Source of the DNA: Macrostomum lignano
Taxonomy: Eukaryota
Reading direction: 5' to 3'
DNA length: 64,000 nt
Assembly (NCBI GenBank): GCA_002269645.1
Contig: NIVC01000576.1
Location: 235,637-299,636, forward strand
Shown here: positions 22,444 through 64,000 of the stretch, piece after piece
How the letters are laid out: the number at the start of each line of letters is the position of its first letter
How positions within the stretch are numbered: position 1 is the first letter of the stretch
The notes under the pieces: model-generated
Seen by the model: only the letters and a program-made list of their open reading frames with translations
Databases searched by the model: none
What the model was told of the DNA's origin: nothing
Made by a program: the position numbers and the translations under genes

Positions 22444-22446
22444 ATG

Positions 22447-28068: not shown

Positions 28069-28524
28069 TTAAGCCACAGTGGCACATATGGCGCCATTGT
28101 TGTAGTGCTTGGCATCGTCGGACTTATTGAACACAACGGCGTAGACCTTGGACAGTAACAGGATGCTCACCGCGAACAGGTTGGTGAAAAGCAGAACGAA
28201 GATCAGCAGAGCGCCTGCTGACGTCAGAGAGGCCATCGTGACGAGGCTGGGAATGAAGGCGATCCACACGAAGGTGGCGCACGCGGTGAAGGCCAGGATG
28301 CACTTGCTGTCGTGGAAATTGTCCGGCAGGCTGCGAACTCGCACGGCCAGCGAGCACGTGACCAGCATGAGCAGCAGGTTGAGCGCGTAGGGAATCCACA
28401 GGCTGCTGGAGAAGTAGTCGCACTGGAACTCCACGACGGGTCTGGCGTCGGATCGGAGGCCGTTGAGCAGCTGCTTGACGGGGCGGATCGGACGCGCGCT
28501 GAGAACGCTGCACAGTAGCACCAC
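28069..28524 (-). CDS. Class C GPCR-1, exon 2 (TM4 end to C-terminus)
   Basis: CTTCAG acceptor; VRSLPDNFHDSKCI..FVWIAFIP...LLLSKVYAVVF, matching class C TM6-TM7 motifs. Confidence 0.92.
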   Translation of the reverse strand: MVLLCSVLSARPIRPVKQLLNGLRSDARPVVEFQCDYFSSSLWIPYALNLLLMLVTCSLAVRVRSLPDNFHDSKCILAFTACATFVWIAFIPSLVTMASLTSAGALLIFVLLFTNLFAVSILLLSKVYAVVFNKSDDAKHYNNGAICATVA

Positions 28525-28677
28525 CTGAAGAGATGGATCGTCCAATATTGAATATTAAATAACCCTTATTTACAATATATTTTCTAGGTAAACTTCAGTT
28601 TTAGAGTAACATAGGAAAAGTAAAATACGAAAAAATGCGGGAGTTCTTCTGAAGCAAAAAAACCAAGAACGAGTTAC

Positions 28678-30750
28678 CTGCAACATACAAACTGCAATTG
28701 TCATGACTATTACGGCCCTCCGCCCTGTGAATTTCAGTCCAGATGTGCCGCGCATGGAGCCCACGAACACGCGGTAGATCCGAGCGCTCTTGGTCAGCAG
28801 AGCCGCGTACACTATCGTGAGGCTGAAGTGGTACAGAAACGCCTGCACGTTGCACACGGTGAGCGACGGCTCGCCGAAGAACAGCGCCACGTCGAAGAGT
28901 CCGAGCTGGATGCCGACCTGTTGGAACACGCTCAGCTCTAGCGAGGACGCCTTCAGCAGCGGCACGTTCGACCTGGCCAAGAAGAACACTCCGGTCGCCA
29001 TGGTGACCGCAGAGCCGAGCGCCGACACGCCGATGAACACGATGCCGCTAGTGTCACTCGGTCGGAGGACGGTCAGCGCGAGCGGCTCGCAGCGAGAGTA
29101 GTTCGAGCTCGGCCAGGTAAGCGAGGCGCACTTCTCGCACAACGTACCGTTCGACCCTACGATCTCGTCGGAGCTGCACGGTCTGCACACCCAGCAGCAC
29201 TTGCTCACCTGCACTCGGTACTCGCGATTGCCGCACGGTAGAGAGCACACACTCGTTGGTACCGAGCGTTGGTCGCTCGCATCTCCAGGCCACGAGATCA
29301 GGCTTCGATTCATGCTGAGACCGTGCTCAGAGCTCCACACACCGACAGTCACTCTCGAGCTCACCTGTTTGCTGCTCTGGTAGAGCACAACATAGGAAGC
29401 GGGACCGTTTCCATTGCTGTCGAGCTTCACCTCTCCCGTGTAGCCGGTGAAGTTCGTTCGGTACAGCTGCCTCAGCAGCAGCGGTCCGGTCACGCACTGC
29501 AGCAGTGCCGACTTGTTCAGCCTCGGCTCCAGGCTGGTCGCGCACTCCGACCTGGCCACCGCGTCGATCGCGTGGGCGAATAAGAGAAACGCGTCCAGCA
29601 TCCGAGCGACTGGAGCGACAATGCTGGACGGGGTGAAGCTGCTCGACTCGGACACTCGACGAGACGAGTTCGTAGTGCAACAGGCACACGTTGAGCAGTT
29701 CATCAGCTGATCAAACATGATTGCACCGTTGTACATCTTAGAGAGGTCAGAGTAGGTAAGGTTCAGGTACCACTGCATCAAGTCGGGTGTTGGGAACATA
29801 TTGAAGTAGACGGTGAATGAGTTGTTTGTATAGATATTTTTATTGTAGTTCCCATCAACCATAATGAGATACACGCCAGCTTTTCCCAATGCTTGAAGAA
29901 GTTGAATAGTCTCCAAATTATTGTCGATACTTTTTAGCCAAATCAGTGCTCGTAAATTTGGTTGGGTTTGATATTGTTCTATTATAGCTGCTGCTACATT
30001 TGCACTTGTCAGTGGCATTAGAAAGGCTAGACAGGCAAGGGGGAATCGAGTTGGCAGAATTGAGGTTAGCTGCGTTACTATGTTTGTGTTGTAGACACTT
30101 CCTGGATCGTAGAGCAGACCGATGTACGTCCAGTTGAACTCGCGGAGCAGGTCGATGATCACCATCGCTTGATATGAGTCCGGACTCACCAGTCGTACAA
30201 AGTTGGGGAACCGAACTCGATCGCTGAGCGAGTCGCTGCTGCACTCGGTTCCGACTGTGGGCAGAGCTTCGTTCTGCAATGGGAATAACAAAGTCTGAGT
30301 GACGGTGCTGGACCAGCCGCCAACGACACCGTGCACCAAATACACCGGGTCGGGATCGATGCCATTGAGCATACTGCACCGGTCTCCAGTTTCCAAAAGA
30401 GCCGGACGTCTCCAAGCAGCTCGAACTCGACTCGCAGCAGCGGCACCTTTAGCCTCGGAGTAGCAGGTGTCGAGAAAAACGACTCCTAAAGTGAAGTTTT
30501 CACTCTGGCTGAATATTGTGCCCGGCTTCGCTGCCACTTTCTCGAGCACGAAGCGAGGCACCAACTGTCGCAGGAATTCCTCCTCTTTGAGACTATTTCT
30601 ACAGTAGCTGGTACTGTGCAGCATTGCTAGTGTGAAGTCTCCAGCCACACAGTAGCTATTTGTCCTTGGCTGTGCAGCTGCGACTTTAATAAACGATGAT
30701 GCTGGAGTCTGAGTCATTAGAACAATTGCAATTATCTGTTGTACTTGCAT
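28678..30750 (-). CDS. Class C (mGluR-like) GPCR-1, exon 1 (VFT, nine-Cys domain, TM1-4)
   Basis: GGWSS, LSDRVRFPNFVRLVSPDSYQA, NWTYIG, SVCSLPC..KCCWVCRPC, LLTKSARIYRVF; CAG|GTAACT donor. Likely ATG is 30750; the spliced model is about 842 aa. Confidence 0.93.
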
Positions 30751-31356
30751 AGTTATAACTATCCGATCGAAATTGACTCTCAGCTCGTCAAATATTATGT
30801 GAGCTTCTGTTTTCAATTTTTTTCTTCAGAATGACAAATGCTGACAGCTTCTAAGCAGAATCAAAACGAAGTTTTCATCCTGAGTAAAAGGGGCTCCAGC
30901 CAATTTGGTTTTGTGAATTCAATTGGCCATGAGTGGCATAGAGAAGCTTGATTGCTTAACCAATCGGCGCTAAAAACATTTTTTCACATCCAGCTACGAA
31001 TTAGCTATCGATAAAAATGTTTTTGATAAAAGTGCATTTTTTGGAGATGCTAGTGATCTTCAGAAAGCCACTTGACTGTGATATTCTCCGCCGAGGCACC
31101 GAGACAGAGGTAAATATTTTACGAATGACCGACAAAGTTGTAGGTCGGTACGTTGGTGAAACATTCGCTCGTAGCTACGTCTAGATTTACCTGAGGCTTT
31201 ACCCGAACGTTTTAGTTGGCTAAACCAAATAAAGCTTAGTTTGCACTGTGCATAACTTAAAAAAATATATTTTAAGCTCACAGTTTAGGGGCCTATAGCG
31301 ATTGACAGTAGGCATAAAGAGCCTGTTTGAGAATCTGTAGATGCTGCAATTGATAG

Positions 31357-32360
31357 TGTCGTGCCGTAGTTCGGTTAATATTCACGACTTGTTAACCGTC
31401 AAGTCTCATAAACATGCATTTATATTGTAACAAAACAAAATCTTATTTAAGTGCAATAGGCGGCATTCGTGGCAGGCCTCCATGCTGAGTACAGTACTTG
31501 TACATTAAACTCATAGAGCCAGTCAGTAATAGAAATGCGTAGATCGTTAGCTCATCAAAAGTGACGCAACCCAGCGGCGCCACATCCGCCTCACCACTGA
31601 GGCGTAAGCCGCTGGGGATGGACTCTTTTGTTGCAGCGCTCGCAACGTCTCGGAAGGTGCGTTGGTCTCCTGAGTTCTTGCGGTCGAGCTCTCGGACTCG
31701 GACTCATCAGCAGTCTCTCCAGCCGCCTGCTCCATTTCGCCTCCGGTCCCTTGCTGCTGGAGGGGCGTGGACGCCGTGTCCGCTGGAAGCTTTGGTCTCG
31801 ATGGGCGAGCACCGACCGGTTGTTGTCTCGAATGACCACTGCAGCCGTGTTACTGCCTGCCTGAACGCCGAAACATGGCTATCTCGGTAGATGCACCGGA
31901 GACAGGCTGATACGAGCGTAAATTATCGGTGCGTCGGTCTCGAATGTCATAGTCAGAGGGCTCCTCAGCTGTCGGCCCATTTTTAGCGCTGATGGACTGC
32001 CTCGGCCGTCCCACCGTGCCATCGACCGGTAGTTGAGCAGCAACTTGGCCAGGTTGGCCTCTAAGGAGCCGCGGTGCACCATGCACTTTGAGAAGTAGTC
32101 TGACCATGCACTCTGAGCAGCCGTTGAACTGAGGATGGTACGATGAACAGTGCCCCAGGTTACACTCAATGCCCCGTAGCCGCTGCTGAAGCTCGCCGTC
32201 GCAGAACTCCGATGCGTTGTCTGACACCATGGGTTCTGGGCACGCCTTGTCTTGAAAAGATCGATCGTAGAATTTGAAGTGTCTTTCTGCTGGCCGTCTT
32301 GTCTGGCACCAGAATGCGTCTACGGGGACGAGGATGGGGTTCCCCTATTTCCCCTTTCTG
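31357..32360 (-). mobile_element. Truncated Gypsy/Ty3 LTR retrotransposon (integrase end plus 3' LTR)
   Basis: Integrase relic, then a purine-rich PPT-like tract (31585-31598), then a TG..CA bounded LTR candidate at 31357-31584. Confidence 0.7.
31900..32300 (-). pseudogene. Gypsy-type integrase core relic
   Basis: LRSIFSRQGVP/MVSDNASEF...SSYHPQFNGCSECMVR/LAKLLLNYRS...SPSALKMGRQLRSPL, with frameshifts. Confidence 0.88.
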
Positions 32361-34675
32361 CATATTTCATTTGCAAAAAGCCCTCAATAACTATTACATA
32401 TTAGAGGTTGCATGGTATCCACAACATTAGACCAATAGCAAAGGATCAGCAAGCATGCGTTATGCTTGATAAGCTACTGAAGAGACCTTTAAACTAGCAA
32501 ATGGATGTCAATTTAAGCTACTAAATGGAGCCAGAGAAGTGAACTAGAAGCAATAGGAGCTCCAGGAAGTGACCTGGAAAAGGGGGTCGCGGCATTGCTA
32601 ATCGTATACTTGACGAGTTTCGAGTCGAGTTAATCTGAGATAGTGGAGCCTTGTCTCGACCTGAGTCGACTTGTTAAATTTATGATTCAGACAGCAGAAG
32701 CATATATTTGCTGCTGTTTTCTCCATTAAGCACTATGCTGTTTAGAGAGGGTGGAGTCAGTTTTTAGTCATGTCGAAGCTTTTTAGAGCAGCGTAACTTG
32801 CGTATTTATTTAAATTTACTATACAATTTATTGTGCAAATGTATGGTTGTCTGTAGCTATGCATTCTATATTTTGCAAAGCAATGCATTAACGAAACATA
32901 TTTTAACTCGTTCTGATAAGTTCCTTCATTTTCTTAGAAAAATGTTAAGAAGACTCTCGAATTTCTAAAAGCGAAAACGAAGCGGAACGGTAAATTAATA
33001 TGTTAAATTGGTGATTTCAGGAATAATCCATATACTAAAAATGGTTTGTAGGTAGGTAGGTAGGTATTACTAGAGTCTAAATTATGTTTTAATGATAAAA
33101 AGTGCTATTGTAAAGCGAAATTGATTACTTTGAAGTGAAATTTCGCATTTTCGGTATTACTTAACTAACTGCTCGACCAAACTCAACTCGAAGCTTCAAA
33201 TCTTGAAGATGGAGTCTAGTACTTCGGGCTCCATTCCATTGACTAAGCCCCAAAAGCTACTGACGAACCAAACGCTGTGCACTAGTGCACCTTCCATTTG
33301 GCCAAGCACAAATAATAAAATCGTAGATTTTACGATTTTATCTACGATTTTATTGGAAAAGCAGCAAGAGAAAAGCTTTGAAAATCTGAATAGGAATTTG
33401 CTGAGCGATAAATTGATTGTTTGACACTTCTGAAACTTGTTTGGCTTTCTTTAACTTGAAGCCAGGTAAACGCAGCGACCTCCATAACATGCATAAGTTT
33501 GACTTAGAAACAGAATTGCATCAAAGAGCGATTCACTAATTGCTATTTGCTATGCGAAAACCTTCTTAGAGACATTGGATTTCTTGGGCTGTCAGGATTA
33601 AAAATGCTATTGAAGCTACACTCGATGCCAATTCTCGATCTGCTTGCTTTTCAGTTCAGATCCACGACAGACTAATAAATGTAATTTCGTTGTTAGACAC
33701 GAAAAAAGAGAAAATCAAACTTTGAACTTAAATCCATGTTGGGGCACTGATTCAATGTCGCTGATTTATTCAACTATGATTTTCTTTCACGTCTGGTAGT
33801 CTCCAGTAGTGAATTGACCTGACTACTTAGAGTAGAACAATTCAACTGAATCTGAATATTCAGAACCGTTTACTGAACAGCCGCTTGTACTTATTGTTGC
33901 AAACATCAGTATTTTCACTGAAGTGTTTGGGCAATAAAATAATTTCTTAACACCAGAAAAGCCTTTATCTGGATCTGTCAATTACATTATCATAAACCCA
34001 CATGTCGTTATATAGGTATATCTGTGTCAAGCAAAGTTCCCTGCAGTTTCTCATACAGTTATCGCAAGTACACTGTAAATTTTTCTTACAAATAAATATT
34101 GCTCTTCGCAGTAACCCCTGGTGTAAACAGCTTATTTAATTAATTACAATAGATGTAACGGAAATAGAGGAAATTACGCGTCTTTTCGTGAATGTCTCAT
34201 AAAAGTAGGGCCAGTAATGTCGGAAGCGATGCACAACCCATGCAATCCAATTGACTGACGTCTAAAGATTTAGCTATCTACAGTAGATGCGAGTATCCAA
34301 TAGATTCAAGCATCTAATAGTATCTCTGCCATAGAACTATTGTTGTATCCCCCAGGTAACGGCCCAGAGAGACACGCAAGCAGCTGCGTGGGGTATAGGG
34401 GCCTAAGCGCCGCCGAAGAGGAAACGCTCGATGCTATTCAAGTTCGCAGCGCTTCCCGAGCCTAGCACCGCCGCAACGGGCTGGTACCACTACTGCGAGA
34501 GTTCACAGGTGCCCCAAAGAGAAAGAGAACTCGTACTATTTGCACACAAAACTTTGGTCACAACAGAAGTGCGCAACAGACCGCGGTCTACTGGCCACGA
34601 TGTGTGAAGTATTAAACTGAGTTGCACTGTTTTCGCACGGCCACACGAGAGCAGGTGGTTTGGAACAGGGATAGC

Positions 34676-35103
34676 GACGTTTGCCTGCGGGACGTTTGCC
34701 AGCCGACGTTTGCCTGCGGGACGTTTGCCAGCCGACGTTTGCCTGCGGGACGTTTGCCAGCCGACGTTTGCCTGCGGGACGTTTGCCAGCCGACGTTTGC
34801 CTGCGGGACGTTTGCCAGCCGACGTTTGCCAGCCGACGTTTGCCAGCCGACGTTTGCCTGCGGGACGTTTGCCAGCCGAAGTTTGCCAGCCGACGTTTGC
34901 CGGCGGGACGTTTGCCGGCCGACGTTTGCCTGCGGGACGTTTGCCAGCCGACGTTTGCCAGCCGACGTTTGCCTGCGGGACGTTTGCCAGCCGAAGTTTG
35001 CCAGCCGACATTTGCCAGCCGACGTTTGCCAGCCGACGTTTGCCTGCGGGACGTTTGCCAGCCGACATTTGCCAGCCGATGTTTGCCTGCTGGAAGTTTG
35101 CCA
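34676..35103. repeat. 29-bp (15+14) subterminal tandem array, left foldback arm
   Basis: GACGTTTGCCTGCGG plus GACGTTTGCCAGCC units; a shorter inverted array lies at 49210-49320. Confidence 0.93.
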
Positions 35104-35512
35104 GCTGTAATTTGCTAGCCAATATAAAGCCAGTCAGTGAAAAATTTGATACTGAAATATTCGCAGTTTAGCGGTTTGACAAAAACCGTTTTTGCTCAAA
35201 CTTTTTGACGGTTATTTGCATATATACAAGTTCGAAAGCAAAATCTATATAAACTATGCAGTTCATTAGTCTAACGCAATACCTAGTTTAACAACGATTT
35301 TGGCACAACATATCAAAAGATGAACATTCATGAGTTTGCCTCGTATGAAAGCAATAACAATTGTTGTGCTGAAAAGATGAAAACTTCCTATCTCCCTATG
35401 GCCTTCAAAACATTTTCCATAGATTTCGAGTGCTGCGCGTCCTTCTACTTTAGTAGTCGTTGGGGTGACTAAGCTTTGTATACGAAGTGTCTAGCGCTTG
35501 CCATCCTACTAG

Positions 35513-38500
35513 TCCTATATACTAAAAATGAGTTGTCTGTGGGTATGTGGGTATGTGGGTATGCGATAGATTTCAGAAAAATTGGCTCAACCGATTTTCT
35601 TCAAACTTGCACCATTCGATCAGAAATTTTCCTGGGACGGTACATGCATCTTGGCTAAGAAATTGCTCAATTTTAAAGGGATTAAATATTCGAAAAACAT
35701 GCTTTTTTGCAAAGGTCAAGCAGCTCTTTCGACCTGAAATGCATTGTAAGAATGCTAGAGAAAAAACTGACTGACTGAATTCTGATTCTGACAAAGATTG
35801 CATCACAACAAGTTGAAAACAGTGCCGAAGAAATGCACACACGACTTGAATGAAATTGCGTAACCATATTGGCAACTTAAATTGAGACTGATTCTGGCTG
35901 ACTGAGAAATTGATTATGTCATAACTTTTTACTCCAATTGACTTGCTGTAAGAATTGAATTATAAGGGCCACAATTTATGTTCTCCAATTGAAAAAGATA
36001 GCCCAGATGCGAACAGACTGGAATGCTAATGTAGCGACTTGGGTTCGAATCTTAGTAGGGCAAAAAAGATTTTTTTTTATTAAAACACCTTAAAAACACA
36101 AAACTTCTAAACATAAAAGAAGCGCAATGTCAAACATAGAAGAGCCACCATGTCGAACATAAAAGAGCTAACATATCGAATATTAAAGAGCCACCATGTC
36201 AAACCTAAACGAGCCACCATGTCTAATATTTAAGAGGCACCATATAAAACATATAAGTGACTTTATGTCAAACATAAAAGAGCCACCATTTCTAACATTA
36301 AACAGCCACCATTTCGAACATTAAAGAGCCACCATGTCGAAAATAAAAGAGTCACTATTTCGAACATCAAAGAGCCACTATGTCAAACATTTAGGAGCCA
36401 CTTTTTCGAACATTAAAGAGCCACCATGTCAAACATAAAAGAGCCAACATGTCAAACATAAAAGAGCCAACATGTCAAACATAAGGGCCACCATGTCAAA
36501 CATTTAAGAGCCACCATGTCAAACATATATGTGACTTTGTGTTAAACATTAAAGAGCCACCATTTCGAACATTAAAGAGCCACCATGTCAAACATGAAAG
36601 AGCTATAACATGAAGAATATTAAAGAGCCACCATGTCGAACATAAAAGAGCTGCCATGTAAAATAACAAAGAGCTACCAAGTTAAACATAAAAGAGCCAC
36701 CATGTAAAACATTAAAGAGCCACCATGTGAAACATTAAAGAGCCACATTGTCAAACCTAGAAGAGCCACCATGTCGAACATAACAGAGCTACCATGTCAA
36801 ACATTAAAGAGCCACCATGTCAAACATTCAAAAGTTACATTGTCAAACATTGAAGAGCCACTATGTCAAACATTTAGGAGCCACTTTGTCGAACATTAAA
36901 GAGCCAACATGTCAGACATTAAAAAAGCCACCGTATCAAATAAAAAGAGTTAACATGTAGAACAAAAAAGAGCCACCATATCGAACATAAAAGAGCCAAC
37001 ATGTCAAACATAAAGAGCCACCATGTCAAACATTTAAGAGCCACCATGTCAAACATATATGTGACTTTATGTCAAACATTAAAGAGCCACCATTTCGGAC
37101 ATAACAGAGCTACCATGTAAAACATTAAAGAGCCACCATGTCAAACATTAAAGAGCCACCATGTCGAACATAAAAGAGCCACCATGTCAAACCTAAAAGA
37201 GCCACCATGTCGAAAATAAAAGAGCCACTATTTCGAACATTAAAGAGCCACCATTTCGAACATTAAAGAGCCACCATGTCGACCATAAAAGAGCCACTAT
37301 TTCGAACATTAAATATCCACCATGTCAAACATTAAAGAGCCACCATGTCAAACATGAAAGAGCTATAACATGAAGAATATTAAAGAGCCACCATGTCGAA
37401 CATAACAGAGCTACCATGTCAAACATTAAAGAGCCACCATGTCAAACATTCAAAAGTTACATTGTCAAACATTGAAGAGCCACTATGTCAAACATTTAGG
37501 AGCCACTTTGTCGAACATTAAAGAGCCAACATGTCAGACATTAAAAAAGCCACCATTTCAAACATTAAAGAGGCACCATGTCGAACATTAAAAAGCCACC
37601 ATGTCGAACATTAAAGAGCCACCATGTTAAACATTAAAGAGCCACCATGTGAAACATTAAAGAGCCACCATGTCAAACATTAAAGAGCCATCATTACATT
37701 AAAGTGCCACCAGGTCAAAAATTAAAGAGCCACCATGTCAAACATTAACGAGTCACCATGTCAAGTATATTCGTGACTCCATGTCAACCATAAAAGAGCC
37801 ACCATGTCAAACATAAAAGAGCCACCACGTCAAACATTAAAGAGCCACCATGTCAAACATAAAAGAGCCACCATGTCAAACATAAAAGAGCCATCATGTT
37901 AAACATTAAAGAGCCACCATGTCAAACATAAAAGAGCCACCATGTCAAAAATAAAAGAGCAACCATGTCAAACATATATGTGACTCCATGTCAAGCAGTA
38001 AAGAGCCACCATGTCAAGCATAAAAAAGCCACCATGTCGAACATAAAAGAGCCCCATGTCAAACATTAAAAAGCCACAATGTCAAACATTAAAGAGACAC
38101 CATGTCGAACATGTCAAACATTAACGAGTCACCATGTCAAGTATATTCGTGACTCCATGTCAACCATAAAAGAGCCATGTCAAAGCCACATGTCAAACAC
38201 TAAAGAGCCACCATGTCAAACATAAAAGAGCCACTATGTCAAACATTAAGGAGACACCATGTTAGACATTAAAAAACCCCGAATCAAACATAAAAGAGCC
38301 ACCATGTAGAACATAAAAGAGCCATCATGTCAAACATTAAAGAGGCACCATGTCGAACATTAAAAAGCCACCATGTCAAACATTAAAGAGCCACCATGTC
38401 GAACATAAAAAAACCACCATGTCGAACATAAAAGAGCCACCATGTCGAACATAAAAGAACCACCATGTCGAACATTAAAGAGCCACCATGTCGAACATTA

Positions 38501-50804: not shown

Positions 50805-51263
50805 CTACTGTGTCCCTGTGGCGTCCAATACACTGTTGTTGTAGTGCTTGGCGTTGTCGGACTTATCGAACACAACGGCGTAGACCTTGGGCAGGAACAG
50901 GATGCTCACCGCGAACAGGTTGGTGAACAGCAGAACGAAGATCAGCAGAGCGCCTGCTGACGTCAGCGAGGCCATCGTGACGAGGCTGGGAATGAAGGCG
51001 ATCCACACGAAGGTGGCGCACGCCGTGAAGGCCAGGATGCACTTGCTGTCGTGGAAATTGTCCGGCAGGCTGCGAACTCGCACGGCCAGCGAGCACGTGA
51101 CCAGCATGAGCAGCAGGTTGAGCGCGTAGGGAATCCACAGGCTGCTGGAGAAGTAGTCGCACTGGAACTCCACGACGGGTCTGGCGTCGGATCGGAGGCC
51201 GTTGAGCAGCTGCTTGACGGGGCGGATTGGACGCGTACTGAGAACGCTGCACAGAAGCACCAC
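50805..51263 (-). CDS. Class C GPCR-2, exon 2
   Basis: ACTCAG acceptor; near-identical to GPCR-1 exon 2 except for the last residues. Confidence 0.92.
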   Translation of the reverse strand: MVLLCSVLSTRPIRPVKQLLNGLRSDARPVVEFQCDYFSSSLWIPYALNLLLMLVTCSLAVRVRSLPDNFHDSKCILAFTACATFVWIAFIPSLVTMASLTSAGALLIFVLLFTNLFAVSILFLPKVYAVVFDKSDNAKHYNNSVLDATGTQ

Positions 51264-52331
51264 CTGAGTGTCGTGAAGGTTCAGGTAGATGCTACAGAGT
51301 GATGTGTTATGCAGTGCGTTCAGTATGATCGCACAGTGCTGTGTTGGATTATGAGACAGAAGCACTTGGAAAATACTTTTTTGCAATTTTAAAAATAAGG
51401 CTTAAGCAAACGACGTTGTACTCCTGGAAATAGATTCTTAAAGAACAAGTTCCGGCTTAAAAAGGTTGTAAAATTTTTCATCGTCCAGGTTTTTGACGAT
51501 CAGGTTCTGGTTTATCCGGTTAAATTAGGAGGCTGAAACAGCATCCTTTGCCACTCAATTTGGAGCTAGGACAAGGCCTAAACTCTTGCCTAGTAAAGTA
51601 GCACGGAGTCATTATCCTCTGCTTTATTAATCCCTTAATCCCAAAGCACTACTTAGCTCGTATCACGTTTCCAACCTCCAAAAAGTGAACCATGGACCCC
51701 GCACCTCGATAAGTAAGCTGCCAAGTTTGCTCCCGGGTTCACCTAGCAGACTCTTTGGCTGACGAAGCCTTTCCCTACTCAATATGGAACTTCTTAAATT
51801 TACAACCGTATTGAGCAGCAAAACAAACGAAAAAGGAGGAAGAAGTTAGGATACTTATTAGGAAGTACGAGCAAAGACTGAATTTAGGCAGTTCTAATTG
51901 AGTATTGAGCTTTCTAGCAAAACTTTCAACCGAAAACGTACTTTATCGTTATGCATTGGAAGGCGATATGACACGTTTGAGCTGCTTGTAGTCGGCAATT
52001 GCTTGAAGACTCGGACTTTGTCAGCTTTGAAAAAACTGCCACGAACTGCCTAATGTGATTGCTCAATTCGATCGATAAAAAACAGCAGCAGCAGCAGCAG
52101 CTCCTTTTTCATTTGTATACTCAGTCAATAGTAATCTTGTCAGCGACTTCATCCAAGATTTGCCGATTACAAAGATATTAACGCTCCCTTGCAACCAAGC
52201 AGAGAACGGAAGTTTGCCTTCAGACGGCTTCTGTGTCTGTATCATACCACTGTTGACGTAACTTGAAAAAGACTATTCAATTTAAAAAAAAATATTTTTC
52301 AAAATAGAATTGCGTTTCATAAATGTCTCAC

Positions 52332-54386
52332 CTGCAACATACAAACTGCAATTGTCAAGACTATTACGGCCCTTCGCCCTGTGAATTTCAGTCCAGATGT
52401 GCCGCGCATGGAGCCCACGAACACGCGGTAGATCCGAGCGCTCTTGGTCAGCAGAGCCGCGTACACCATCGTGAGGCTGAAGTGGTACAGAAACGCCTGC
52501 ACGTTGCACACGGTGAGCGACGGCTCGCCGAAGAACAGCGCCACGTCGACGAGTCCGAGCTGGATGCCGACCTGTTGGAACACGCTCAGCTCTAGCGAGG
52601 ACGCCTTCAGCAGCGGCACGTTCGACCTGGCCAAGAAGAACACTCCGGTCGCCATGGTGACCGCAGAGCCGAGCGCCGACACGCCGATGAACACGACGCC
52701 GCTAGTGTCACTCGGTCGGAGGACGGTCAGCGCGAGCGGCTCGCAGCGAGAGTAGTTCGAGCTCGGCCAGGTAAGCGAGGCGCACTTCTCGCACAACGTA
52801 CCGTTCGACCCTACGATCTCGTCGGAGCTGCACGGTCTGCACACCCAGCAGCACTTGCTCACCTGCACTCGGTACTCGCGATTGCCGCACGGTAGAGAGC
52901 ACACACTCGTTGGTACCGAGCGTTGGTCGCTCGCGTCTCCAGGCCACGAGATCAGGCTTCGATTCATGCTGAGACCGTGCTCAGAGCTCCACACACCGAC
53001 AGTCACTCTCGAGCTCACCTGTTTGCTGCTCTGGTAGAGCACAACATAGGAAGCGGGACCGTTTCCATTGCTGTCGAGTTTCACCTCTCCCGTGTAGCCG
53101 GTGAAGTTCGTTCGGTACAGCTGCCTCAGCAGCAGCGGTCCGGTCACGCACTGCAGCAGCGCCGACTTGTTCAGCCTCGGCTCCAGGCTGGTCGCGCACT
53201 CCGACCTGGCCACCGCGTCGATCGCGTGGGCGAATAAGAGAAACGCGTCCAGCATCCGAGCGACTGGAGCGACAATGCTGGACGGGGTGAAGCTGCTCGA
53301 CTCGGACACTCGACGAGACGAGTTCGTAGTGCAACAGGCACACGTTGAGCAGTTCATCAGCTGATCAAACATGATTGCACCGTTGTACATCTTAGAGAGG
53401 TCAGAGTAGGTAAGGTTCAGGTACCACTGCATCAAGTCGGGTGTTGGGAACATATTGAAGTAGACGGTGAATGAGTTGTTTGTATAGATATTTTGATTGT
53501 AGTTCTCATCCGCCATTATGACAAACACTCCAGTCCTTTCAACTGCTTGTAGTAAGTCGACGCTTTTCAAGTTGTCATTAACGTCCTTCAGCCAAATCAG
53601 AGCTCGCAAGTTTGGCTTCTGTTTTATAGCCTCTTTTAATTCCATTGGTTCTGTGTTGCTAGTCATCGGAATAATGAACGCAAAACAGGCGCTAGGAAAT
53701 CGGCCTGGAAGACTGGATGACAACTGAAGAGCGATGTTTGTATTGTAGACACTTCCTGGATCGTAGAGCAGACCGATGTACGTCCAGTTGAACTCGCGGA
53801 GCAGGTCAATGATCACCATCGCTTGATATGAGTCCGGACTCACCAGTCGTACAAAGTTGGGAAACCGAACTCGATCGCTGAGCGAGTCGCTGCTGCACTC
53901 GGTTCCGACTGTGGGCAGAGCTTCATTCTGCAACGGGAACAGCATCGTCTGTGTGACAGCGCTGGACCAGCCGCCGATCACGCCGTGCACTAAATACACC
54001 GGGTCGGGATCGATGCCATTGAGCATACTGCACCGGTCTCCAGTTTCCAACAGAGCTGGACGTCTCCAAGCAGCTCGAACTCGACTCGCAACAGCGGCAC
54101 CTTTAGCCTCGGAGTAGCAGGTGTCGAGAAAAACGACTCCTAAAGTGAGGTTTTCACTCTGGCTGAATATTGTGCCCGGCTTCTCTGCCAACTTTCTTCG
54201 TAAGAAATGGGGCGCAACCTGACGCAGGTACTCGGACTCCGTTGGGTGGCCAGTGCAATAGCTCGATCCGTGCAGTCCGACCAGCATGAAGTCTCCTGCT
54301 TGGCAGTAGCCGTCTGCTTTCGGCGTGTCGTCTGCCGTCGCTACTGAGAACCAAATTAGCAGCACCCATAGGACAGAGGAAAGCAT
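52332..54386 (-). CDS. Class C (mGluR-like) GPCR-2, exon 1
   Basis: Signal peptide MLSSVLWVLLIWFSVATA, then VFT, CRD and TM1-4; CAG|GTGAGA donor; the spliced model is about 837 aa. Confidence 0.95.
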
Positions 54387-55154: not shown

Positions 55155-56056
55155 TCAGCTACAGTGGGGGTGCCAGCTACAGAGGGGGCGCCAGCTACAA
55201 AGGGGGTGCCAGCTACAGAGGGGGTGCCAGCTACAGAGGGGGCGCCAGCTACAAAGGGGGTGCCAGCTACAGAGGGGGCGCCAGCTACAAAGGGGGTGCC
55301 AGCTACAGAGGGGGTGCCAGCTACAGAGGGGGTGCCAGCTACAGAGGGGGTGCCAGCTACAGAAAGGGTGCCAGTTACAGAGGGGGTGCCAGCTACAGAG
55401 GGGACGCCAGCTACAGAGGGGACGCAAGCTAAAGGGGGGACGCCAGCTACAGAGGGGGTGCCACCTACAGAGGGGGTGCCAGCTACAAAGGGGGCGCCAG
55501 CTACAGAGGGGGCGCCAGCTACAGAGGGGACGCCAGCTACAGAGGGGCGCCAGCTACAGAGGGGGCGCCAGCTACAGAGGGGGCGCAAGCTAAAGGGGGG
55601 ACGCCAGCTACAGGGGGGCGCCAGCTACAGAGGGGGTGCCAGCTACAGAGGGGGTGCCAGCTACAGAGGGGGTGCCAGCTACAGAGGGGGCGCCAGCTAC
55701 AGAGGGGGTGCCAGCTACAAAGGGGGCGCCAGCTACAGAGGGGGCGCCAGCTACAGAGGGGGTGCCAGCTACAGAGGGGGTGCCAGCTACAGAGGGGGTG
55801 CCAGCTACAGAGGGGGCGCCAGCTACAGAGGGGGTGCCAGCTACAAAGGGGGCGCCAGCTACAGAGGGGGCGCCAGCTACAGAGGGGGTGCCAGCTACAG
55901 AGGGGGCGCCAGCTACAGAGGGGGCGCAAGCTACAAAGGGGGCGCCAGCTACAGAGGGGGCGCCAGCTACAGAGGGGGCGCAAGCTACAGAGGGGGCGCC
56001 AGCTACAAAGGGGGCGCCAGCTACAGAGGGGGCGCCAGCTAAAGGGGGGACGCAAG
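55155..56056. repeat. 18-bp minisatellite, about 50 copies
   Basis: Unit GCCAGCTACAGAGGGGG(T/C); the source of the PATEGV / GGASYR ORFs. Confidence 0.96.
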
Positions 56057-56464
56057 CTATCTCTGAATTGCTTTTAGAAACAGACCTATGTAGCAGAAGC
56101 CAAGGTTACGCAATCTATAACCTTGGTAAAACCTTTTCATGTTAAGTTTCATACAAATCCACTTTCTAAGTAAAAGTCACGGTAGAGTTCCTACGAGAAT
56201 CACTGTAGTACGTGTCTGAAAAATTGGACTATAATTTTAGCAACGATTTAGGAGCGAAGTAATTACTCCAGATTGACAGTACACTTACGCAGTTATCGTG
56301 TGGCCTAGTAAGCGTCCTCATCCAGCAATTAGCTTCAATCTGATGCGACATCAGCAGGTCCATTTTAATTGTATGCATGCTAGTGCGTGTTTGCTAGTGC
56401 GGTCTCGACATTTACCTGATTGGTTGAGCAATGGCCATACACAGCGTTCCTTAGCCGGGGCTTT

Positions 56465-56675
56465 TCAGTCACAGGGATTTGAGTCTTTGGGATTTCAATC
56501 ACCAGGATTTCAATGATGGGATTTCAGTCACGGGGATTTCAGTCACGGGGAGTTCAGTCACGGGGATTTCAGTCACGGGGAGTTCAGTCACGGGGAGTTC
56601 AGTCACGGGGATTTCAGTCACGGGATTCCAGTCACGGGGAGTTCAGTCACGGGGATTTCAGTCATGGGGATTTCA
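56465..56675. repeat. 15-bp minisatellite, about 14 copies
   Basis: Unit TTCAGTCACGGGGA(T/G). Confidence 0.9.
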
Positions 56676-60060: not shown

Positions 60061-60068
60061 ATATAAAA
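60061..60068 (+). promoter_or_regulatory. Candidate TATA box upstream of GPCR-3
   Basis: ATATAAAA about 100 bp before the ATG at 60167; motif match only. Confidence 0.3.
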
Positions 60069-60166
60069 CGTGACGCCTTGACTTTGAGCCGGGGCTTTCT
60101 CATGACGCATTTATCTTCGTCATAACTAAGTGTAAAAACTAACCGCTCAAAAAAACAGGTAAAAGC

Positions 60167-62218
60167 ATGCGATCAAAAGGTGTGATTATCCTGTCACTTC
60201 TACTGCTGGGACTACAGCGTACACCAGTTTGCCAGGCTGTCGATGGATACTGCATGCCCGGTGACATCACAATCGGCCTTCTGCACGGCACCGGCCAGTG
60301 TCCGAGCAGCCTCACTGAAGCAGCCTTACTGAGACAGATTCTACCCTGGTTCATTCGGGAGAAAATTCAAACTCGGCCGGATCTGCTGTTCGGTGCAAAC
60401 AACATTAGTCTGGGCTTGGCCTTTCTGGAGACCTGCTACAAGGAGACGGTGGCCATTGAGGCCGCCAATCGAGTATCCCCGGCCTGGAAAAGTCACTCGC
60501 CTGATACCGGCATTCCTAGCGGCTGCAACGGCACCTCATGGCCTGCCAGCAGCTCGAAGAGGCCTTTGCACGGAGTTGTAGGAGGCTGGTCAAGCGCGGA
60601 GACGCAGGTTCTTTCGTTCGCTTTGCAGCCATTCAAAGTGCCCATGGTCGGCACGGAGTGCAGCAGCGACTCGCTTAGCGACCGCACACGATTTCCCAAT
60701 GTGGTCAGGCTGGTGAGTCCGGACTCCTACCAGGCCGTCGTCATGATAGACCTGGCTCGCGAGTTCGACTGGACCTACATCGGCGTAGTGTATGACGCCA
60801 GCAACTTATACTTCACCAACATAGCCCTACAGTTTTCGTCAAGCCTGCCAATTAGATTTCCAGAGGCCTGCTTGGCCTTCATCATACCAATCACTGGCGC
60901 AACACAGGACAGCGAGATCCTGGAAACAGTGGAGTCTCAGCAGAATATGAAAGCTGTGGTGTGGCTCAACTCGGTCAGCAGAACCTCGGAGAATATTTTT
61001 AGTGTTCTTGGCAAGGCTGGCATTATTCTGATCTTTAGCGATACGGGTTATAACACCAATGCCTATGCGAACGCATCTTTTACTGTCTACTTCAGCCTGT
61101 TCCCAACACCCGACTTGATGCAGTGGTACCTGAACCTTACCTACTCTGACCTCTCTAAGATGTACAACGGTGCAATCATGTTTGATCAGCTGATGAACTG
61201 CTCAACGTGTGCTTGTTGCACTACGAACTCGTCTCGTCGAGTGTCCGAGTCGAGCAGCTTCACCCCGTCCAGCATTGTCGCTCCAGTCGCTCGGATGCTG
61301 GACGCGTTTCTCTTGTTCGCCCACGCGATCGACGCGGTGGCCAGGTCGGAGTGCGCGACCAGCCTGGAGCCGAGGCTGAACAAGTCGGCGCTGCTGCAGT
61401 GCGTGACCGGACCGCTGCTGCTGAGGCAGCTGTACCGAACGAACTTCACCGGCTACACGGGAGAGGTGAAGCTCGACAGCAACGGAAACGGTCCCGCTTC
61501 CTATGTTGTGCTCTACCAGAGCAGCAAACAGGTGAGCTCGAGAGTGACTGTCGGTGTGTGGAGCTCTGAGCACGGTCTCAGCATGAATCGAAGCCTGATC
61601 TCGTGGCTTGGAGACGCGACTTACCAACGCTCGGTACCAACGAGTGTGTGCTCTCTACCGTGCGGCAATCGCGAGTACCGAGTGCAGGTGAGCAAGTGCT
61701 GCTGGGTGTGCAGACCGTGCAGCTCCGACGAGATCGTAGGGTCGAACGGTACGTTGTGCGAGAAGTGCGCCTCGCTTACCTGGCCGAGCTCGAACTACTC
61801 TCGCTGCGAGCCGCTCGCGCTGACCGTCCTCCGACCGAGCGACACTAGCGGCATCGTGTTCATCGGCGTGTCGGCGCTCGGCTCTGCGGTCACCATGGCG
61901 ACCGGAGTGTTCTTCTTGGCCAGGTCGAACGTGCCGCTGCTGAAGGCGTCCTCGCTAGAGCTGAGCGTGTTCCAACAGGTCGGCATCCAGCTCGGACTCG
62001 TCGACGTGGCGCTGTTCTTCGGCGAGCCGTCGCTCACCGTGTGCAACGTGCAGGCGTTTCTGTACCACTTCAGCCTCACGATGGTGTACGCGGCTCTGCT
62101 GACCAAGAGCGCTCGGATCTACCGCGTGTTCGTGGGCTCCATGCGCGGCGCATCTGGACTCAGCTTTACCGGGCGTAAAGCTGTGGTTGTGATGACAATC
62201 GTAGTTTGCCTGTTGCAG
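60167..62218 (+). CDS. Class C (mGluR-like) GPCR-3, exon 1
   Basis: Signal peptide MRSKGVIILSLLLLGL.., then VFT, CRD and TM1-4; CAG|GTGAGT donor. Confidence 0.95.
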
Positions 62219-62652
62219 GTGAGTTTTTTTCTGCTAAAGCATCGATCCAAATGCTTATCTAGTTTTTTGTCCACAGACTTCGACAGTATCAATATTGATG
62301 GTATATTAGAGTACATGAAAAACTCTCCTTTCTTTCTGCAATAATCTGTCTACCCGTTGTGCCGTTCAATTTTTTGTCAGTGGGATCCAGTTGCAATTAG
62401 GAATTCAATCGGCTGCGCGGAGTAATGATCAGTCAGAAAACATTTGGACTTTTTACATCTCGATTGTTATACGATAGTTTAGGCTTAGATCTTGGCTTTA
62501 TATGTAATGACTCGATATATGCAGCTCTGCAGTATAGCATCTCTACTAGTGATACGAAATTGAAAGTCTAGCCCACGAGATCGCTGAGGGATAGACAATA
62601 GTTACTTTTTTATCATTGCAGCTTTATTTCCAACTAACGGTTATTAAAGAAC

Positions 62653-62923
62653 CAGGGGGTTGCAATTGATTTCATATTGGGGGCAAAAAACAAAAATTTT
62701 ACATGTAGATGCACATGACTAAATAAAATCGTGTTGTCAGCGCTCATTTTGGCGACACAGGAACTCATTTTAGCGCCGCAGGCACTTATTTTGGTGCCGC
62801 ATGTGCTACTCGTATATTTTAGCACCCTGAAACACTATTATTGCAATATTTATTTTCACAACAGGTCAAAAGACTGCTTTTACTAGGGGGACATGTCCTG
62901 CCTGTCCCCCCTGTACGCCCCTG
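62653..62923. mobile_element. Old hAT-type MITE in the GPCR-3 intron
   Basis: CAGGGG.. / ..TACGCCCCTG ends; flanks TAAAGAAC / TGCAGAAC (6/8). Confidence 0.45.
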
Positions 62924-63697
62924 TGCAGAACTACCTACATTTCCCGGGTCACTGAGACGGTCTGGGTGACAGTATTCTGTGGTCTCGGTTGAATTTATAG
63001 TAGGAGAGCTTGCCAATGTTTCAGCAACAATGTAGTCAGAAACCAAAGTCAGTTGTTCTTTCTGACAACCTACACTCTGTTGTGCTCAAATACTGCTAAA
63101 GCTAAGTAGCACGAGCGACTTTGTGAGGCTTACGAGTATTTTGCTTGTTTCGTAGTTTAATTTGAATGGGAATAAAAAGGTCGATATAGAGGATAGCAAC
63201 CTCCCAACGTCATTCATTCCAATGCATCCACGGTAGAGAGGACGGAGCACAAAGGCGGCACAATGTACAGCGCAATGGCTAACACCCATTTTCACGAGGC
63301 TCACAAAAGAGCCTAAGAGAAATGGAGGCAAACACAAAAGACTAAACAAGTGCATTGCATTTGCAGTTTGCCCAGCACAGATGCCATTATACTACACCTA
63401 GTTCACGCTAATGCAAAGATGAGACGGGCATTAATCCAACCTCTTAGCCATAACTCTCCATTCTCTCCTCAACAGCGGAAGCTGGGGCCAATTGTGGCGC
63501 AAATTGCCTCATCCACAGTTGAGTCGAGAGCCGCGGGAGTGGCGTGAATTGCGTCACTTGGGGCTGAGATCTGAGAGAAGTTTAATCGCTGGTTTTGGAG
63601 CGGGAATTCTCTAACATGTTGCTGAGTGTGTGTGCTGAGATCGGAATGAATCGAGCTGCTCTAAAACATTGATGTAGCTTTCTTCTCTAAACCTCAG

Positions 63698-64000
63698 GTG
63701 GTGCTCCTGTGCAGCGTTCTCAGTACGCGTCCGATCCGCCCCATCAAGCTGCTGCTCAACGGCCTCCGATCCGACGCCAGACCCGTCGTGGAGTTCCAGT
63801 GCGACTACTTCTCCAGCAGCCTGTGGATTCCCTACGCGCTCAACCTGCTGCTCATGCTGGTCACGTGCTCGCTGGCCGTGCGAGTTCGCAGCCTGCCGGA
63901 CAATTTCCACGACAGCAAGTGCATCCTGGCCTTCACGGCGTGCGCCACCTTCGTGTGGATCGCCTTCATTCCCAGCCTCGTCACGATGGCCTCGCTGACG
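63698..64000 (+). CDS. Class C GPCR-3, exon 2 (runs off the window)
   Basis: ACCTCAG acceptor; VVLLCSVLSTRPIRPIKLLLNG..., near-identical to the other two copies. Confidence 0.92.
   Translation, partial: MVLLCSVLSTRPIRPIKLLLNGLRSDARPVVEFQCDYFSSSLWIPYALNLLLMLVTCSLAVRVRSLPDNFHDSKCILAFTACATFVWIAFIPSLVTMASLT

What the first reader, a model, noticed from the sequence alone, without database searches (positions are those of the whole stretch)
28069..64000. Class C GPCR trio with a shared signalling chassis and swappable Venus-flytrap sensor segments
Seen: from FPTPDLMQWYL through the CRD and 7TM the three genes are almost identical even at silent sites (I count about 8 differences over about 1150 bp between copies 1 and 2). 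The ligand-binding region is diverged. Copy 3 differs across its first ~300 aa. Copies 1 and 2 differ in the signal peptide and first ~45 aa, share a 445-bp block, then differ again over ~85 aa of lobe II. Established: in class C GPCRs the VFT sets ligand specificity, and the CRD and 7TM transmit the signal. Inference: this is a lineage-specific chemosensory receptor family, analogous to V2R/OlfC/T1R, in which concerted evolution fixes the effector half while the sensor half diversifies.
Basis: partly seen in the sequence, partly recalled or inferred. Interest (0 to 1): 0.85.

Follow-up and report, generated by a model that had tools for sequence, protein, structure and literature searches.

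The report
Gene-converted trio of glutamate-receptor-like GPCRs
Three neighbouring receptor genes of an unidentified invertebrate are old duplicates whose signalling two-thirds has been kept almost identical, most likely by repeated copying between the genes, while most of their ligand-binding domains have drifted far apart; this is a clean new example of a known evolutionary process rather than a new kind of system.

Summary
The window holds three two-exon class C GPCR genes: copy 1 at 30750-28069 (-), copy 2 at 54386-50805 (-), and copy 3 at 60167-64000+ (+, cut by the window end).

- **Shared core.** From FPTPDLMQWYL onward the copies are about 99% identical, with dS 0.012-0.028. I count exactly 8 differences between copies 1 and 2 up to the intron.
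- **Diverged N-terminal blocks.** These differ at 42-49% of bases and dS is saturated.
- **Where similarity stops.** It stops within 2-5 bp of the exon borders. The introns (153, 1068 and 1479 bp) and the flanks cannot be aligned.
- **GC3.** It is 0.79-0.90 in the homogenised parts and 0.36-0.64 in the diverged parts.
- **Edge effect.** The few differences between copies 1 and 2 cluster around the intron (p = 2.6e-4).

Together these point to ancient tandem paralogues under long-running, DNA-level, GC-biased interlocus gene conversion.

An unrelated tail-to-tail pair of class C GPCR genes from another organism (L002) shows the same mosaic.

- The boundary lies inside the Venus-flytrap domain, near the lobe 2 to lobe 1 crossover, not at the VFT/CRD border.
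- The proteins are closest to mGluRs, not to V2R/OlfC/T1R.
- Neither a chemosensory role nor segment "swapping" has been shown.

The closest precedent is regional gene conversion in teleost protocadherin clusters. I rate the interest as moderate.

The parts
28069..30750 (-). Copy 1, class C GPCR gene, 842 aa. Exon 1 is 30750-28678, the intron is 28677-28525 (153 bp), and exon 2 is 28524-28069 including the stop.
   Evidence: ORFs and splice junctions; Pfam ANF_receptor 83-456, NCD3G 497-547, 7tm_3 564-817
30526..30750 (-). Copy 1 variable block V1 (alignment columns 1-75): weak signal peptide, first strand and first helix of lobe 1
   Evidence: 49% base differences from copy 2, dS saturated; informative sites are star-like at 34/33/24
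30082..30525 (-). Copy 1 block shared with copy 2 only (columns 76-225): rest of the first lobe-1 segment and the start of lobe 2, including the GGWSS and TECSSDSLSD motifs
   Evidence: 21 differences in 450 nt, dS 0.167; informative sites c1=c2 161 against 5 and 3
29839..30081 (-). Copy 1 variable block V2 (columns 226-306): core of lobe 2
   Evidence: 43% differences from copy 2, dS saturated; mapped to lobe 2 by alignment to mGluR1/4
28678..29796 (-). Copy 1 homogenised core of exon 1, from FPTPDLMQWYL: second lobe-1 segment, CRD, TM1 to mid-TM4
   Evidence: 8 differences from copy 2; dS 0.012; GC3 0.79
28129..28524 (-). Copy 1 homogenised part of exon 2 (TM4-TM7); the last 20 codons (28128-28072) are diverged
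   Evidence: dS 0.04-0.07 against dS about 1.9 in the tail; GC3 0.89
50805..54386 (-). Copy 2, class C GPCR gene, 837 aa. Exon 1 is 54386-52332, the intron is 52331-51264 (1068 bp), and exon 2 is 51263-50805 including the stop.
52332..53450 (-). Copy 2 homogenised core of exon 1
53493..53735 (-). Copy 2 variable block V2 (lobe 2)
54180..54386 (-). Copy 2 variable block V1, with a classical signal peptide MLSSVLWVLLIWFSVATA
60167..64000 (+). Copy 3, class C GPCR gene, head-to-head with copy 2. Exon 1 is 60167-62218, the intron is 62219-63697 (1479 bp), and exon 2 runs from 63698 and is cut by the window end at residue 785.
60167..61099 (+). Copy 3 variable region (first 311 residues): first lobe-1 segment plus lobe 2
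   Evidence: about 42% differences from both other copies, dS 1.7 to infinite
61100..62149 (+). Copy 3 homogenised core
   Evidence: 10-12 differences in 1044 nt, dS 0.024-0.028, GC3 0.80
62150..62218 (+). Copy 3 diverged end of exon 1 (23 codons before the intron)
   Evidence: 18-19 differences, dS about 1.1; an edge effect at the limit of homology

Best explanation
The three genes are ancient tandem paralogues of a lineage-specific, mGluR-like class C GPCR family.

Since the duplication, interlocus (non-allelic) gene conversion at the DNA level has repeatedly copied the 3' two-thirds of the coding sequence between them. That part covers the second lobe-1 segment of the Venus flytrap, the cysteine-rich domain and the 7TM. 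It happens in two separate homology blocks, exon 1 and exon 2, because the introns no longer share any homology.

The 5' third escaped conversion early and diverged to saturation. It covers the signal peptide, the first lobe-1 segment and lobe 2. Copies 1 and 2 exchanged one further tract (columns 76-225) longer ago.

Once a block exceeds the divergence that recombination tolerates, the boundary maintains itself. Selection for different ligand specificities may have started the escape, and may still reinforce it, but this is inferred and not shown.

The functional consequence, also inferred, is receptors with near-identical CRD/7TM/G-protein-coupling surfaces and different binding pockets. The residues that hold the amino-acid backbone in mGluR1 (S165, T188, D208) are kept as S, S and D. 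K409 is replaced by Pro, so the ligand is probably an amino-acid-like molecule other than glutamate.
For: 1. dS is 0.012-0.028 in the core but saturated (1.7 to infinite) in the N-terminal blocks of the same exon. Selection on the protein cannot do this.
2. The boundaries are sharp and the long identical runs were never reached in permutations. Tree signal along the gene is discordant: star-like in columns 1-75 and 226-306, c1=c2 in 76-225 and 671-693, and all three identical in 321-670.
3. blastn with word size 9 finds no similarity in the introns, upstream or downstream. Similarity stops 2-5 bp from the splice sites. The duplication is therefore old.
4. GC3 is 0.79-0.90 in the homogenised parts against 0.36-0.64 in the diverged blocks. 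This is the signature used to infer repeated conversion in fugu protocadherins (PMC1852091). Dispersed relatives (L003-L007) show no such N-versus-C contrast in GC3.
5. Six of the 17 copy 1/copy 2 differences in columns 307-825 lie within 15 codons of the intron (binomial p = 2.6e-4). Copy 3 is diverged over the last 23 codons of exon 1. This is the edge effect expected for DNA-level tracts bounded by non-homology.
6. An independent tail-to-tail pair in L002 has dS 0.25-0.92 in codons 1-445, 0.008 in codons 446-825, a saturated tail, and GC3 0.53 against 0.41.
7. The window has no N and contains an assembled 7-kb satellite array, so short-read collapse is unlikely.
Against: - No other paralogues and no orthologous cluster from a sister species could be obtained. 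The classic test (paralogues more alike than orthologues in the core, the reverse in the VFT) was therefore not done.
- The direction, number and age of the conversion events are unknown.
- dN/dS in the diverged blocks (0.16-0.48) gives no sign of positive selection, but dS is saturated, so the test is uninformative.
- A patch inside the block shared by copies 1 and 2 (columns 140-162) holds 13 of its 21 differences and is not explained by copy 3.
Confidence: 0.8

Rival explanations
1. The whole genes duplicated recently. Afterwards, divergent 5' segments (V1, V2, and the whole N-terminal third of copy 3) were imported by conversion from more distant paralogues elsewhere in the genome. This would be true 'sensor swapping' onto a young chassis.
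For: The mosaic V1 / shared / V2 pattern between copies 1 and 2 is what patchwise import would give. The patch at columns 140-162 differs in all three copies, which hints at an unseen donor.
Against: A recent duplication should leave introns and flanks about as similar as the core, yet nothing aligns at word size 9. The strong GC3 enrichment of the core points to long-running rather than recent homogenisation. The intron position is ancient: it is shared with L001 and L003-L005, so the introns were not newly gained.
Confidence: 0.1
2. Conversion through spliced cDNA (RNA-mediated gene conversion). This would explain why identity ends exactly at the exon borders on both sides of unrelated introns.
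For: Similarity ends within 2-5 bp of the splice junctions in all three copies.
Against: Differences pile up on both sides of the junction. For copies 1 and 2 this is 6 of 17 within 15 codons (p = 2.6e-4). Copy 3 is diverged over the last 23 codons of exon 1. A cDNA template would carry a tract straight across the junction, leaving no such edge effect. The intronless L002 pair shows the same mosaic without any need for cDNA.
Confidence: 0.05
3. Assembly or polishing artefact: paralogous reads were mis-assigned, so the consensus of the C-terminal halves was artificially homogenised or chimeric.
For: Near-identical 1.1-kb segments in three nearby copies are the kind of sequence where polishing with multi-mapping short reads can homogenise paralogues. 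No read data are available here.
Against: - Each copy keeps private differences inside the core.
- The boundaries jump from about 1% to about 45% divergence within a few codons, and they fall at different positions in different pairs.
- GC3 is biologically coherent with conversion.
- The window is gap-free through 7 kb of satellite DNA.
- The same pattern occurs in an unrelated assembly, L002.
Confidence: 0.03
4. Nucleotide-level purifying selection on the C-terminal coding DNA (an overlapping functional RNA or a regulatory element) keeps silent sites identical, with no recombination involved.
For: Many antisense ORFs overlap the GC-rich core.
Against: Such ORFs are expected in GC3-rich sequence. 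There are no Rfam hits in the window. Constraint would have to cover more than 1.4 kb at every silent site yet stop at the introns. The closest relative, L001, is only 74-82% identical in the same region, so the nucleotide sequence is not conserved between lineages.
Confidence: 0.02

Closest known systems
Regional gene conversion in teleost clustered protocadherin genes (fugu: PMC1852091, read; zebrafish: Noonan et al. 2004, cited there)
   Same: - Tandem receptor paralogues with divergent 5' ligand/recognition-domain sequence and a 3' part more than 99% identical at the nucleotide level.
- A discrete boundary inside the ectodomain.
- Higher GC3 in the homogenised part.
- The interpretation: repeated gene conversion.
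   Different: - A different protein family (cadherin ectodomains, single-pass membrane proteins) from vertebrates.
- The variable exons there are spliced to shared constant exons.
- Here each gene carries its own full 7TM, an intron splits the homogenised part into two blocks, and the C-terminal tail escapes conversion.
Gene conversion among fish OlfC (V2R-like) class C chemoreceptor genes (channel catfish subfamily 9, GENECONV; PMC6588630)
   Same: Class C GPCR paralogues in clusters with statistically detected conversion events.
   Different: - That paper, as far as I read it, reports no domain-restricted pattern of constant signalling half and variable VFT.
- By my own knowledge, OlfC/V2R genes have six exons and belong to the CaSR/T1R branch.
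- The proteins here are closer to mGluRs and have two exons.
Models of 'escape from concerted evolution' under selection against homogenisation (reviewed in PMC3924837 and PMC3966226, listed; abstracts only were read)
   Same: Duplicates exchange DNA for a long time while particular segments stay different.
   Different: Those are general models and examples from other gene families. Whether selection is what maintains V1 and V2 here is untested.
Invertebrate mGluR-like receptors that lack glutamate-specific residues (mGluR class IV; PMC6307864)
   Same: VFT + CRD + 7TM architecture. The residues that contact the amino-acid backbone are kept, while a residue critical for glutamate (K409) is replaced.
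   Different: Class IV receptors lose both R78 and K409, whereas R78 is kept here. Identity to any named relative is only 27-34%. Phylogenetic placement was not tested.

Membership tests
Class C (family 3) GPCR | N-terminal Venus-flytrap / periplasmic-binding-protein-like domain | tested here: met
   Pfam ANF_receptor, E 1e-30 to 2e-33, all three copies
Class C (family 3) GPCR | Cysteine-rich domain (NCD3G) between the VFT and the 7TM | tested here: met
   NCD3G covers positions 1-54 of 54 at E 5e-9. The score of 36.3 bits is just under the curated cut-off of 38.9. The cysteines are invariant in alignment A1 with mGluRs.
Class C (family 3) GPCR | 7tm_3 heptahelical domain | tested here: met
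   7tm_3 covers positions 3-251 of 251 at E 5e-39 to 8e-41 in copies 1 and 2. Copy 3 is cut by the window end.
Metabotropic glutamate receptors (glutamate-binding classes I-III) | Closest solved and annotated relatives are mGluRs | tested here: met
   PDB: mGluR4/6/3/7/8/2/5/1 at E 1e-66 to 1e-50, against CaSR at 1e-34 and T1R2 at 1e-21. Named relatives are annotated 'mGluR-like', but identity is only 27-34%.
Metabotropic glutamate receptors (glutamate-binding classes I-III) | Glutamate-contacting residues, especially R78 and K409 (mGluR1 numbering), plus the backbone binders S165, T188 and D208 | tested here: not met
   In alignment A1 with Esox mGluR1, R78 is kept (the LRQ motif), S165 is S, T188 is S and D208 is D, but K409 aligns with Pro. 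The importance of these residues is taken from PMC6307864. The motif positions in mGluR1 rest partly on my own knowledge.
Metabotropic glutamate receptors (glutamate-binding classes I-III) | Phylogenetic placement inside classes I-IV | not tested
   No tree was built.
V2R / OlfC / T1R / CaSR chemosensory branch | Closest sequence relatives lie in that branch, and the vertebrate-type multi-exon gene structure with the 7TM in one exon is present | tested here: not met
   The CaSR and T1R matches are far weaker than the mGluR matches. The genes here have two exons with the intron inside TM4. The six-exon V2R/OlfC structure is from my own knowledge.
V2R / OlfC / T1R / CaSR chemosensory branch | Expression in chemosensory cells and response to external chemical cues | not testable with these tools
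   No expression or functional data are available.
Concerted evolution by interlocus gene conversion | Silent-site identity in tracts, next to saturated silent-site divergence in the same genes | tested here: met
   dS 0.012-0.028 against 1.7 to infinite
Concerted evolution by interlocus gene conversion | Tracts longer than chance, with discordant relationships along the gene | tested here: met
   Permutations 0/2000 and 0/10000; informative-site tallies by segment
Concerted evolution by interlocus gene conversion | The paralogues are old: non-coding DNA around the tracts is unrelated | tested here: met
   No intron or flank similarity at word size 9
Concerted evolution by interlocus gene conversion | GC-biased composition of the converted tracts | tested here: met
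   GC3 0.79-0.90 against 0.36-0.64; there is no such contrast in the dispersed relatives L003-L007
Concerted evolution by interlocus gene conversion | Paralogues more similar to each other than to their orthologues in a sister species; polymorphisms shared between paralogues | not testable with these tools
   The organism is unidentified. The only close relative is a 1.7-kb Logan contig (L001, 74-82% nt identity) that lacks the N-terminal part.

The most novel reading that the evidence does not exclude
Homogenisation of the end of the VFT plus CRD plus 7TM, with divergence of lobe 1a and lobe 2, may be a recurrent, selection-maintained design principle of clustered invertebrate class C GPCRs. 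It was seen here and, independently, in L002. Because class C receptors work as dimers, conversion would keep neighbouring paralogues compatible for dimerisation and G-protein coupling. Different sensor lobes could then be combined in heterodimers, giving a combinatorial ligand code.
Probability: 0.12. Interest if true: 0.7.

Novelty: new member of a known kind. Interest (0 to 1): 0.42.

Why it matters
- **A clean example in a new family.** It shows domain-restricted concerted evolution in a receptor family where, as far as my literature searches reached, this has not been described. It recurs in a second, unrelated locus.
- **Phylogenetics and gene counts.** Trees built from the 7TM of such clusters will wrongly suggest very recent duplications. 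Only the N-terminal VFT blocks carry the true history.
- **Receptor biology.** The three genes are natural chimeras that hold CRD, 7TM and part of lobe 1 constant while varying the first lobe-1 segment and lobe 2. That makes them a ready-made panel for mapping which VFT segments set ligand specificity.
- **Limits.** It does not open a new mechanism or settle a long-standing question.

Tried and rejected
- **The repeat finder on the whole window.** The output was swamped by the 24-bp satellite, so I replaced it with a self-BLAST.
- **Word-indexed protein searches.** The full copy 2 protein gave only 13 distant hits. The core segment gave none. The species itself is not in the collection, so no further paralogues, orthologues or possible donors of V1 and V2 could be found.
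- **Organism identification.** The full HMMER scan found relatives at no more than 34% identity, plus one 78% exon-2 fragment (P0029/L001). The organism could not be identified. Named relatives are nemertean, annelid, mollusc, hemichordate and priapulid 'mGluR-like' proteins.
- **Look-up of the Nucella protein.** It failed.
- **Loci L003-L007.** Each has a single gene within 10 kb on either side, so they served only as negative controls: no homogenised segments and no GC3 contrast.
- **Rfam and tRNA scans of the window.** Both were empty.
- **Structure prediction.** I did not run it, because the tool returns no coordinates from which lobes could be assigned. Lobes were mapped by alignment to mGluRs instead.
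- **Positive selection in V1 and V2.** This could not be assessed because dS is saturated.
- **Explanations rejected.** Recent whole-gene duplication (introns unalignable), cDNA-mediated conversion (edge effect at the intron), nucleotide-level constraint (L001 is only 74-82% identical) and simple collapse (private differences, gap-free satellites).

Full report
**What is there**

A self-BLAST of the window and ORF listings show three related genes.
- Copy 1 is on the minus strand: ATG at 30750, stop at 28069.
- Copy 2 is on the minus strand: ATG at 54386, stop at 50805.
- Copy 3 is on the plus strand: ATG at 60167, running off the window end at 64000.

Each gene has one large exon (2073, 2055 and 2052 nt), a phase-0 GT/AG intron after '...CMLQ', and a second exon beginning 'VVLLCS'. 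The introns are 153, 1068 and 1479 bp.

All three proteins carry ANF_receptor, NCD3G and 7tm_3, so they are class C GPCRs. The intron lies in TM4, judged from the alignment to mGluR4. No other class C fragment occurs in the window (tblastn).

Copies 1 and 2 lie in tandem about 20 kb apart. More than 10 kb of that gap is satellite DNA. Copies 2 and 3 are head-to-head, 5.8 kb apart.

**Checking the observation**

I built a codon alignment of the spliced CDSs and computed Nei-Gojobori estimates.

- From FPTPDLMQWYL (alignment column 321) to the end of exon 1, copies 1 and 2 differ at exactly 8 sites.
- In columns 323-670 the three pairs differ at 6, 12 and 10 sites, with dS 0.012, 0.028 and 0.024.
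- Copy 3 differs from the others at about 42% of bases over columns 1-320. dS there is 1.7 to infinite.
- Copies 1 and 2 differ at 49% of bases in columns 1-75. They share columns 76-225 (21 differences, dS 0.167). They differ again at 43% in columns 226-306.

The longest identical runs (217-334 nt) were never reached in 2000 permutations.

Informative-site tallies show discordant history along the gene:

| Columns | c1=c2 | c1=c3 | c2=c3 | Pattern |
|---|---|---|---|---|
| 1-75 | 34 | 33 | 24 | star-like |
| 76-225 | 161 | 5 | 3 | c1 = c2 |
| 226-306 | 47 | 33 | 29 | near star-like |
| 321-670 | 8 | 2 | 4 | all three almost identical |
| 671-693 | 17 | 1 | 0 | c1 = c2 |

- Copy 3 is diverged again in the last 23 codons of exon 1 (dS about 1.1).
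- The last ~20 codons of copies 1 and 2 are diverged (dS about 1.9).
- Similarity stops 2-5 bp from the splice sites.

**Why this is gene conversion between old paralogues**

*The non-coding DNA is unrelated.* With blastn at word size 9, nothing aligns in the introns, upstream or downstream of any pair. A recent whole-gene duplication would leave introns as similar as the core. The intron position itself is old. It is shared by the nearest relative L001, which has a 68-bp intron, and by three paralogues of another organism, L003-L005.

*GC3 is raised in the homogenised parts.*

| Region | GC3 |
|---|---|
| Core of exon 1 | 0.79-0.80 |
| Exon 2 | 0.88-0.90 |
| Diverged blocks | 0.36-0.64 |

The same contrast was used to argue for repeated conversion in fugu protocadherins (PMC1852091). 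It is not an intrinsic property of CRD/7TM coding sequence in this family, because the dispersed relatives L003-L007 show no consistent N-versus-C difference.

*There is an edge effect at the intron.* The few differences between copies 1 and 2 cluster around the intron: 6 of 17 lie within 15 codons of it (p = 2.6e-4). Copy 3 has lost identity over the last 23 codons of exon 1. This is what DNA-level tracts confined by non-homologous introns should produce. It argues against a cDNA template, which would carry tracts across the junction.

*Nucleotide-level constraint is excluded.* L001 is only 74% identical in the core and 82% in exon 2.

**An independent replicate**

The best hit of the first protein search (P0001, 25% identity to copy 2) lies in an ENA contig, next to a second intronless class C GPCR in tail-to-tail orientation (L002). 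That pair shows the same mosaic:

| Codons | dS | GC3 |
|---|---|---|
| 1-445 | 0.25-0.92 | 0.39-0.44 |
| 446-825 (end of VFT, CRD, 7TM) | 0.008 | 0.53 |
| C-terminal tail | saturated | 0.41 / 0.51 |

The pattern is therefore not peculiar to this window or to this assembly.

**Where the boundaries fall in the protein**

I aligned the proteins to solved mGluRs and to fish mGluR1/5 and invertebrate relatives (alignment A1). The lobe limits of mGluR1 are from my own knowledge.

- V1 (columns 1-75) holds the signal peptide, the first strand and the first lobe-1 helix. The R78 equivalent is conserved there, in 'LRQ'.
- The block shared by copies 1 and 2 (columns 76-225) holds the rest of the first lobe-1 segment. 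It includes the GGWSS and TECSSDSLSD motifs (S165, T188 and D208 equivalents: S, S, D) and the start of lobe 2.
- V2 (columns 226-306) is the core of lobe 2.
- The three-way core starts close to the lobe 2 to lobe 1 crossover.

So the 'chassis' includes roughly the last third of the VFT, not just CRD + 7TM.

K409 aligns with Pro. Following the logic of PMC6307864, the receptors probably bind an amino-acid-like ligand other than glutamate. This is inference.

**What the family is**

- Solved relatives: mGluR4/6/3/7 at E 1e-66 to 1e-57, CaSR at 1e-34, T1R2 at 1e-21.
- A full HMMER scan of 1.84 billion representatives found nothing above 34% identity, apart from a 78% exon-2 fragment.
- Named relatives are 'mGluR-like' proteins of nemerteans, annelids, molluscs, a hemichordate and a priapulid.

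The organism remains unidentified. The family is a divergent, lineage-specific offshoot of mGluR-like receptors, not a V2R/OlfC/T1R relative. Nothing here bears on chemosensory expression.

**Mechanism and its uncertainty**

What is shown:
- recombinational homogenisation of two exon-bounded blocks among old paralogues;
- an older tract shared only by copies 1 and 2;
- GC-biased composition of the converted DNA.

What is inferred:
- The core has been in concerted evolution since the duplication, while V1, V2 and the N-terminal third of copy 3 escaped early.
- The boundary is now self-maintaining, because 40-50% divergence blocks heteroduplex formation.
- Selection for different ligand specificity may have started the escape.

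The data do not distinguish selection from a neutral ratchet. dN/dS cannot be used because dS is saturated.

**Artefact?**

This is unlikely, for these reasons:
- Each copy has private differences inside the core.
- The boundaries differ between pairs.
- The window has no N and contains an assembled 7-kb satellite array.
- L002 comes from another assembly.

Read-level confirmation is still the formal test.

**Comparison with what is known**

Regional conversion that homogenises the 3' part of tandem receptor genes, while the 5' recognition domains stay diverse, is well documented for teleost protocadherins. That includes the GC3 signature and a discrete boundary inside the ectodomain. Conversion events have also been detected among fish OlfC genes.

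My searches found no description of a domain-restricted pattern in class C GPCRs, nor of this invertebrate family.

I therefore rate it a new member of a known kind, of moderate interest. It is useful as a caution for receptor phylogenies and as a natural chimera series, but it is not a new mechanism.

Noticed in passing
window 40661-47629 (and 39963-43261 / 44322-47626): A 24-bp satellite (GATTATTGCACTTGATAAACCAAG, about 288 copies). It is organised as two ~3.3-kb blocks that are 91% identical to each other. A ~300-bp unit recurs at 35509-35808, 39986-40276 and 44348-44635, at the edges of the satellite arrays.
   Followed up: partly
window 36109-39656: A 23/46-bp satellite (AAACATTAAAGAGCCACCATGTC, about 154 copies, about 79% matches) with strong AT and GC skew. 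It lies between copies 1 and 2.
   Followed up: no
window 55156-56059: An 18-bp tandem repeat (CAGCTACAGAGGGGGCGC, 50 copies, 91% matches). It starts about 770 bp upstream of the copy 2 start codon, in the head-to-head spacer shared with copy 3. A possible promoter-proximal role was not examined.
   Followed up: no
window 30672-30750 (copy 1 N-terminus): Copy 1 has a weak signal peptide (MQVQQIIAIVLMTQTPASS: no basic n-region, a 7-residue hydrophobic core). Copies 2 and 3 have classical ones. Copy 1 may use another first exon, or it may be decaying at its 5' end (by eye).
   Followed up: no
window 31853-32344 (-) and 4892-5176 (+): Decayed mobile-element remnants. An integrase-like ORF lies 1.1 kb upstream of copy 1 (rve, E 0.031, below threshold). 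A Tc1/mariner-type transposase tail '[20 protein letters not shown]' is also present (DDE_3, E 3e-6, 27.4 bits against a cut-off of 28.6).
   Followed up: partly
window 30270-30338 (copy 1) / 53924-53992 (copy 2), alignment columns 140-162: Inside the block that copies 1 and 2 otherwise share, a 23-codon patch around the GGWSS motif holds 13 of the 21 differences. At 9 sites all three copies differ, so the patch was not copied from copy 3. It could be a micro-tract from an unseen paralogue or local divergence.
   Followed up: partly
window 9250-9718, 10562-10987, 20571-21891, 22309-24014, 13192-13708, 6630-7185, 34675-35105: The 28 kb upstream of copy 1 contains no recognisable gene. It is dominated by long microsatellites, (TATC)n, (GTCT)n and (TGTC)n of up to 1.7 kb, and by minisatellites of 14-23 bp. 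The window has no tRNA and no Rfam match.
   Followed up: partly
L002 10001-12610 (+) and 14199-16781 (-): A tail-to-tail pair of intronless class C GPCR genes from another organism (ENA ERZ21788738). It shows the same mosaic of diverged VFT, homogenised CRD and 7TM, and diverged tail.
   Followed up: yes
L003, L004, L005 (ENA ERZ26222911): Three dispersed paralogues in one assembly share the two-exon structure, with the intron at the same TM4 position and variable intron length (about 0.5 to 4.4 kb). They have no homogenised segments between them. This is consistent with conversion needing physical proximity.
   Followed up: partly
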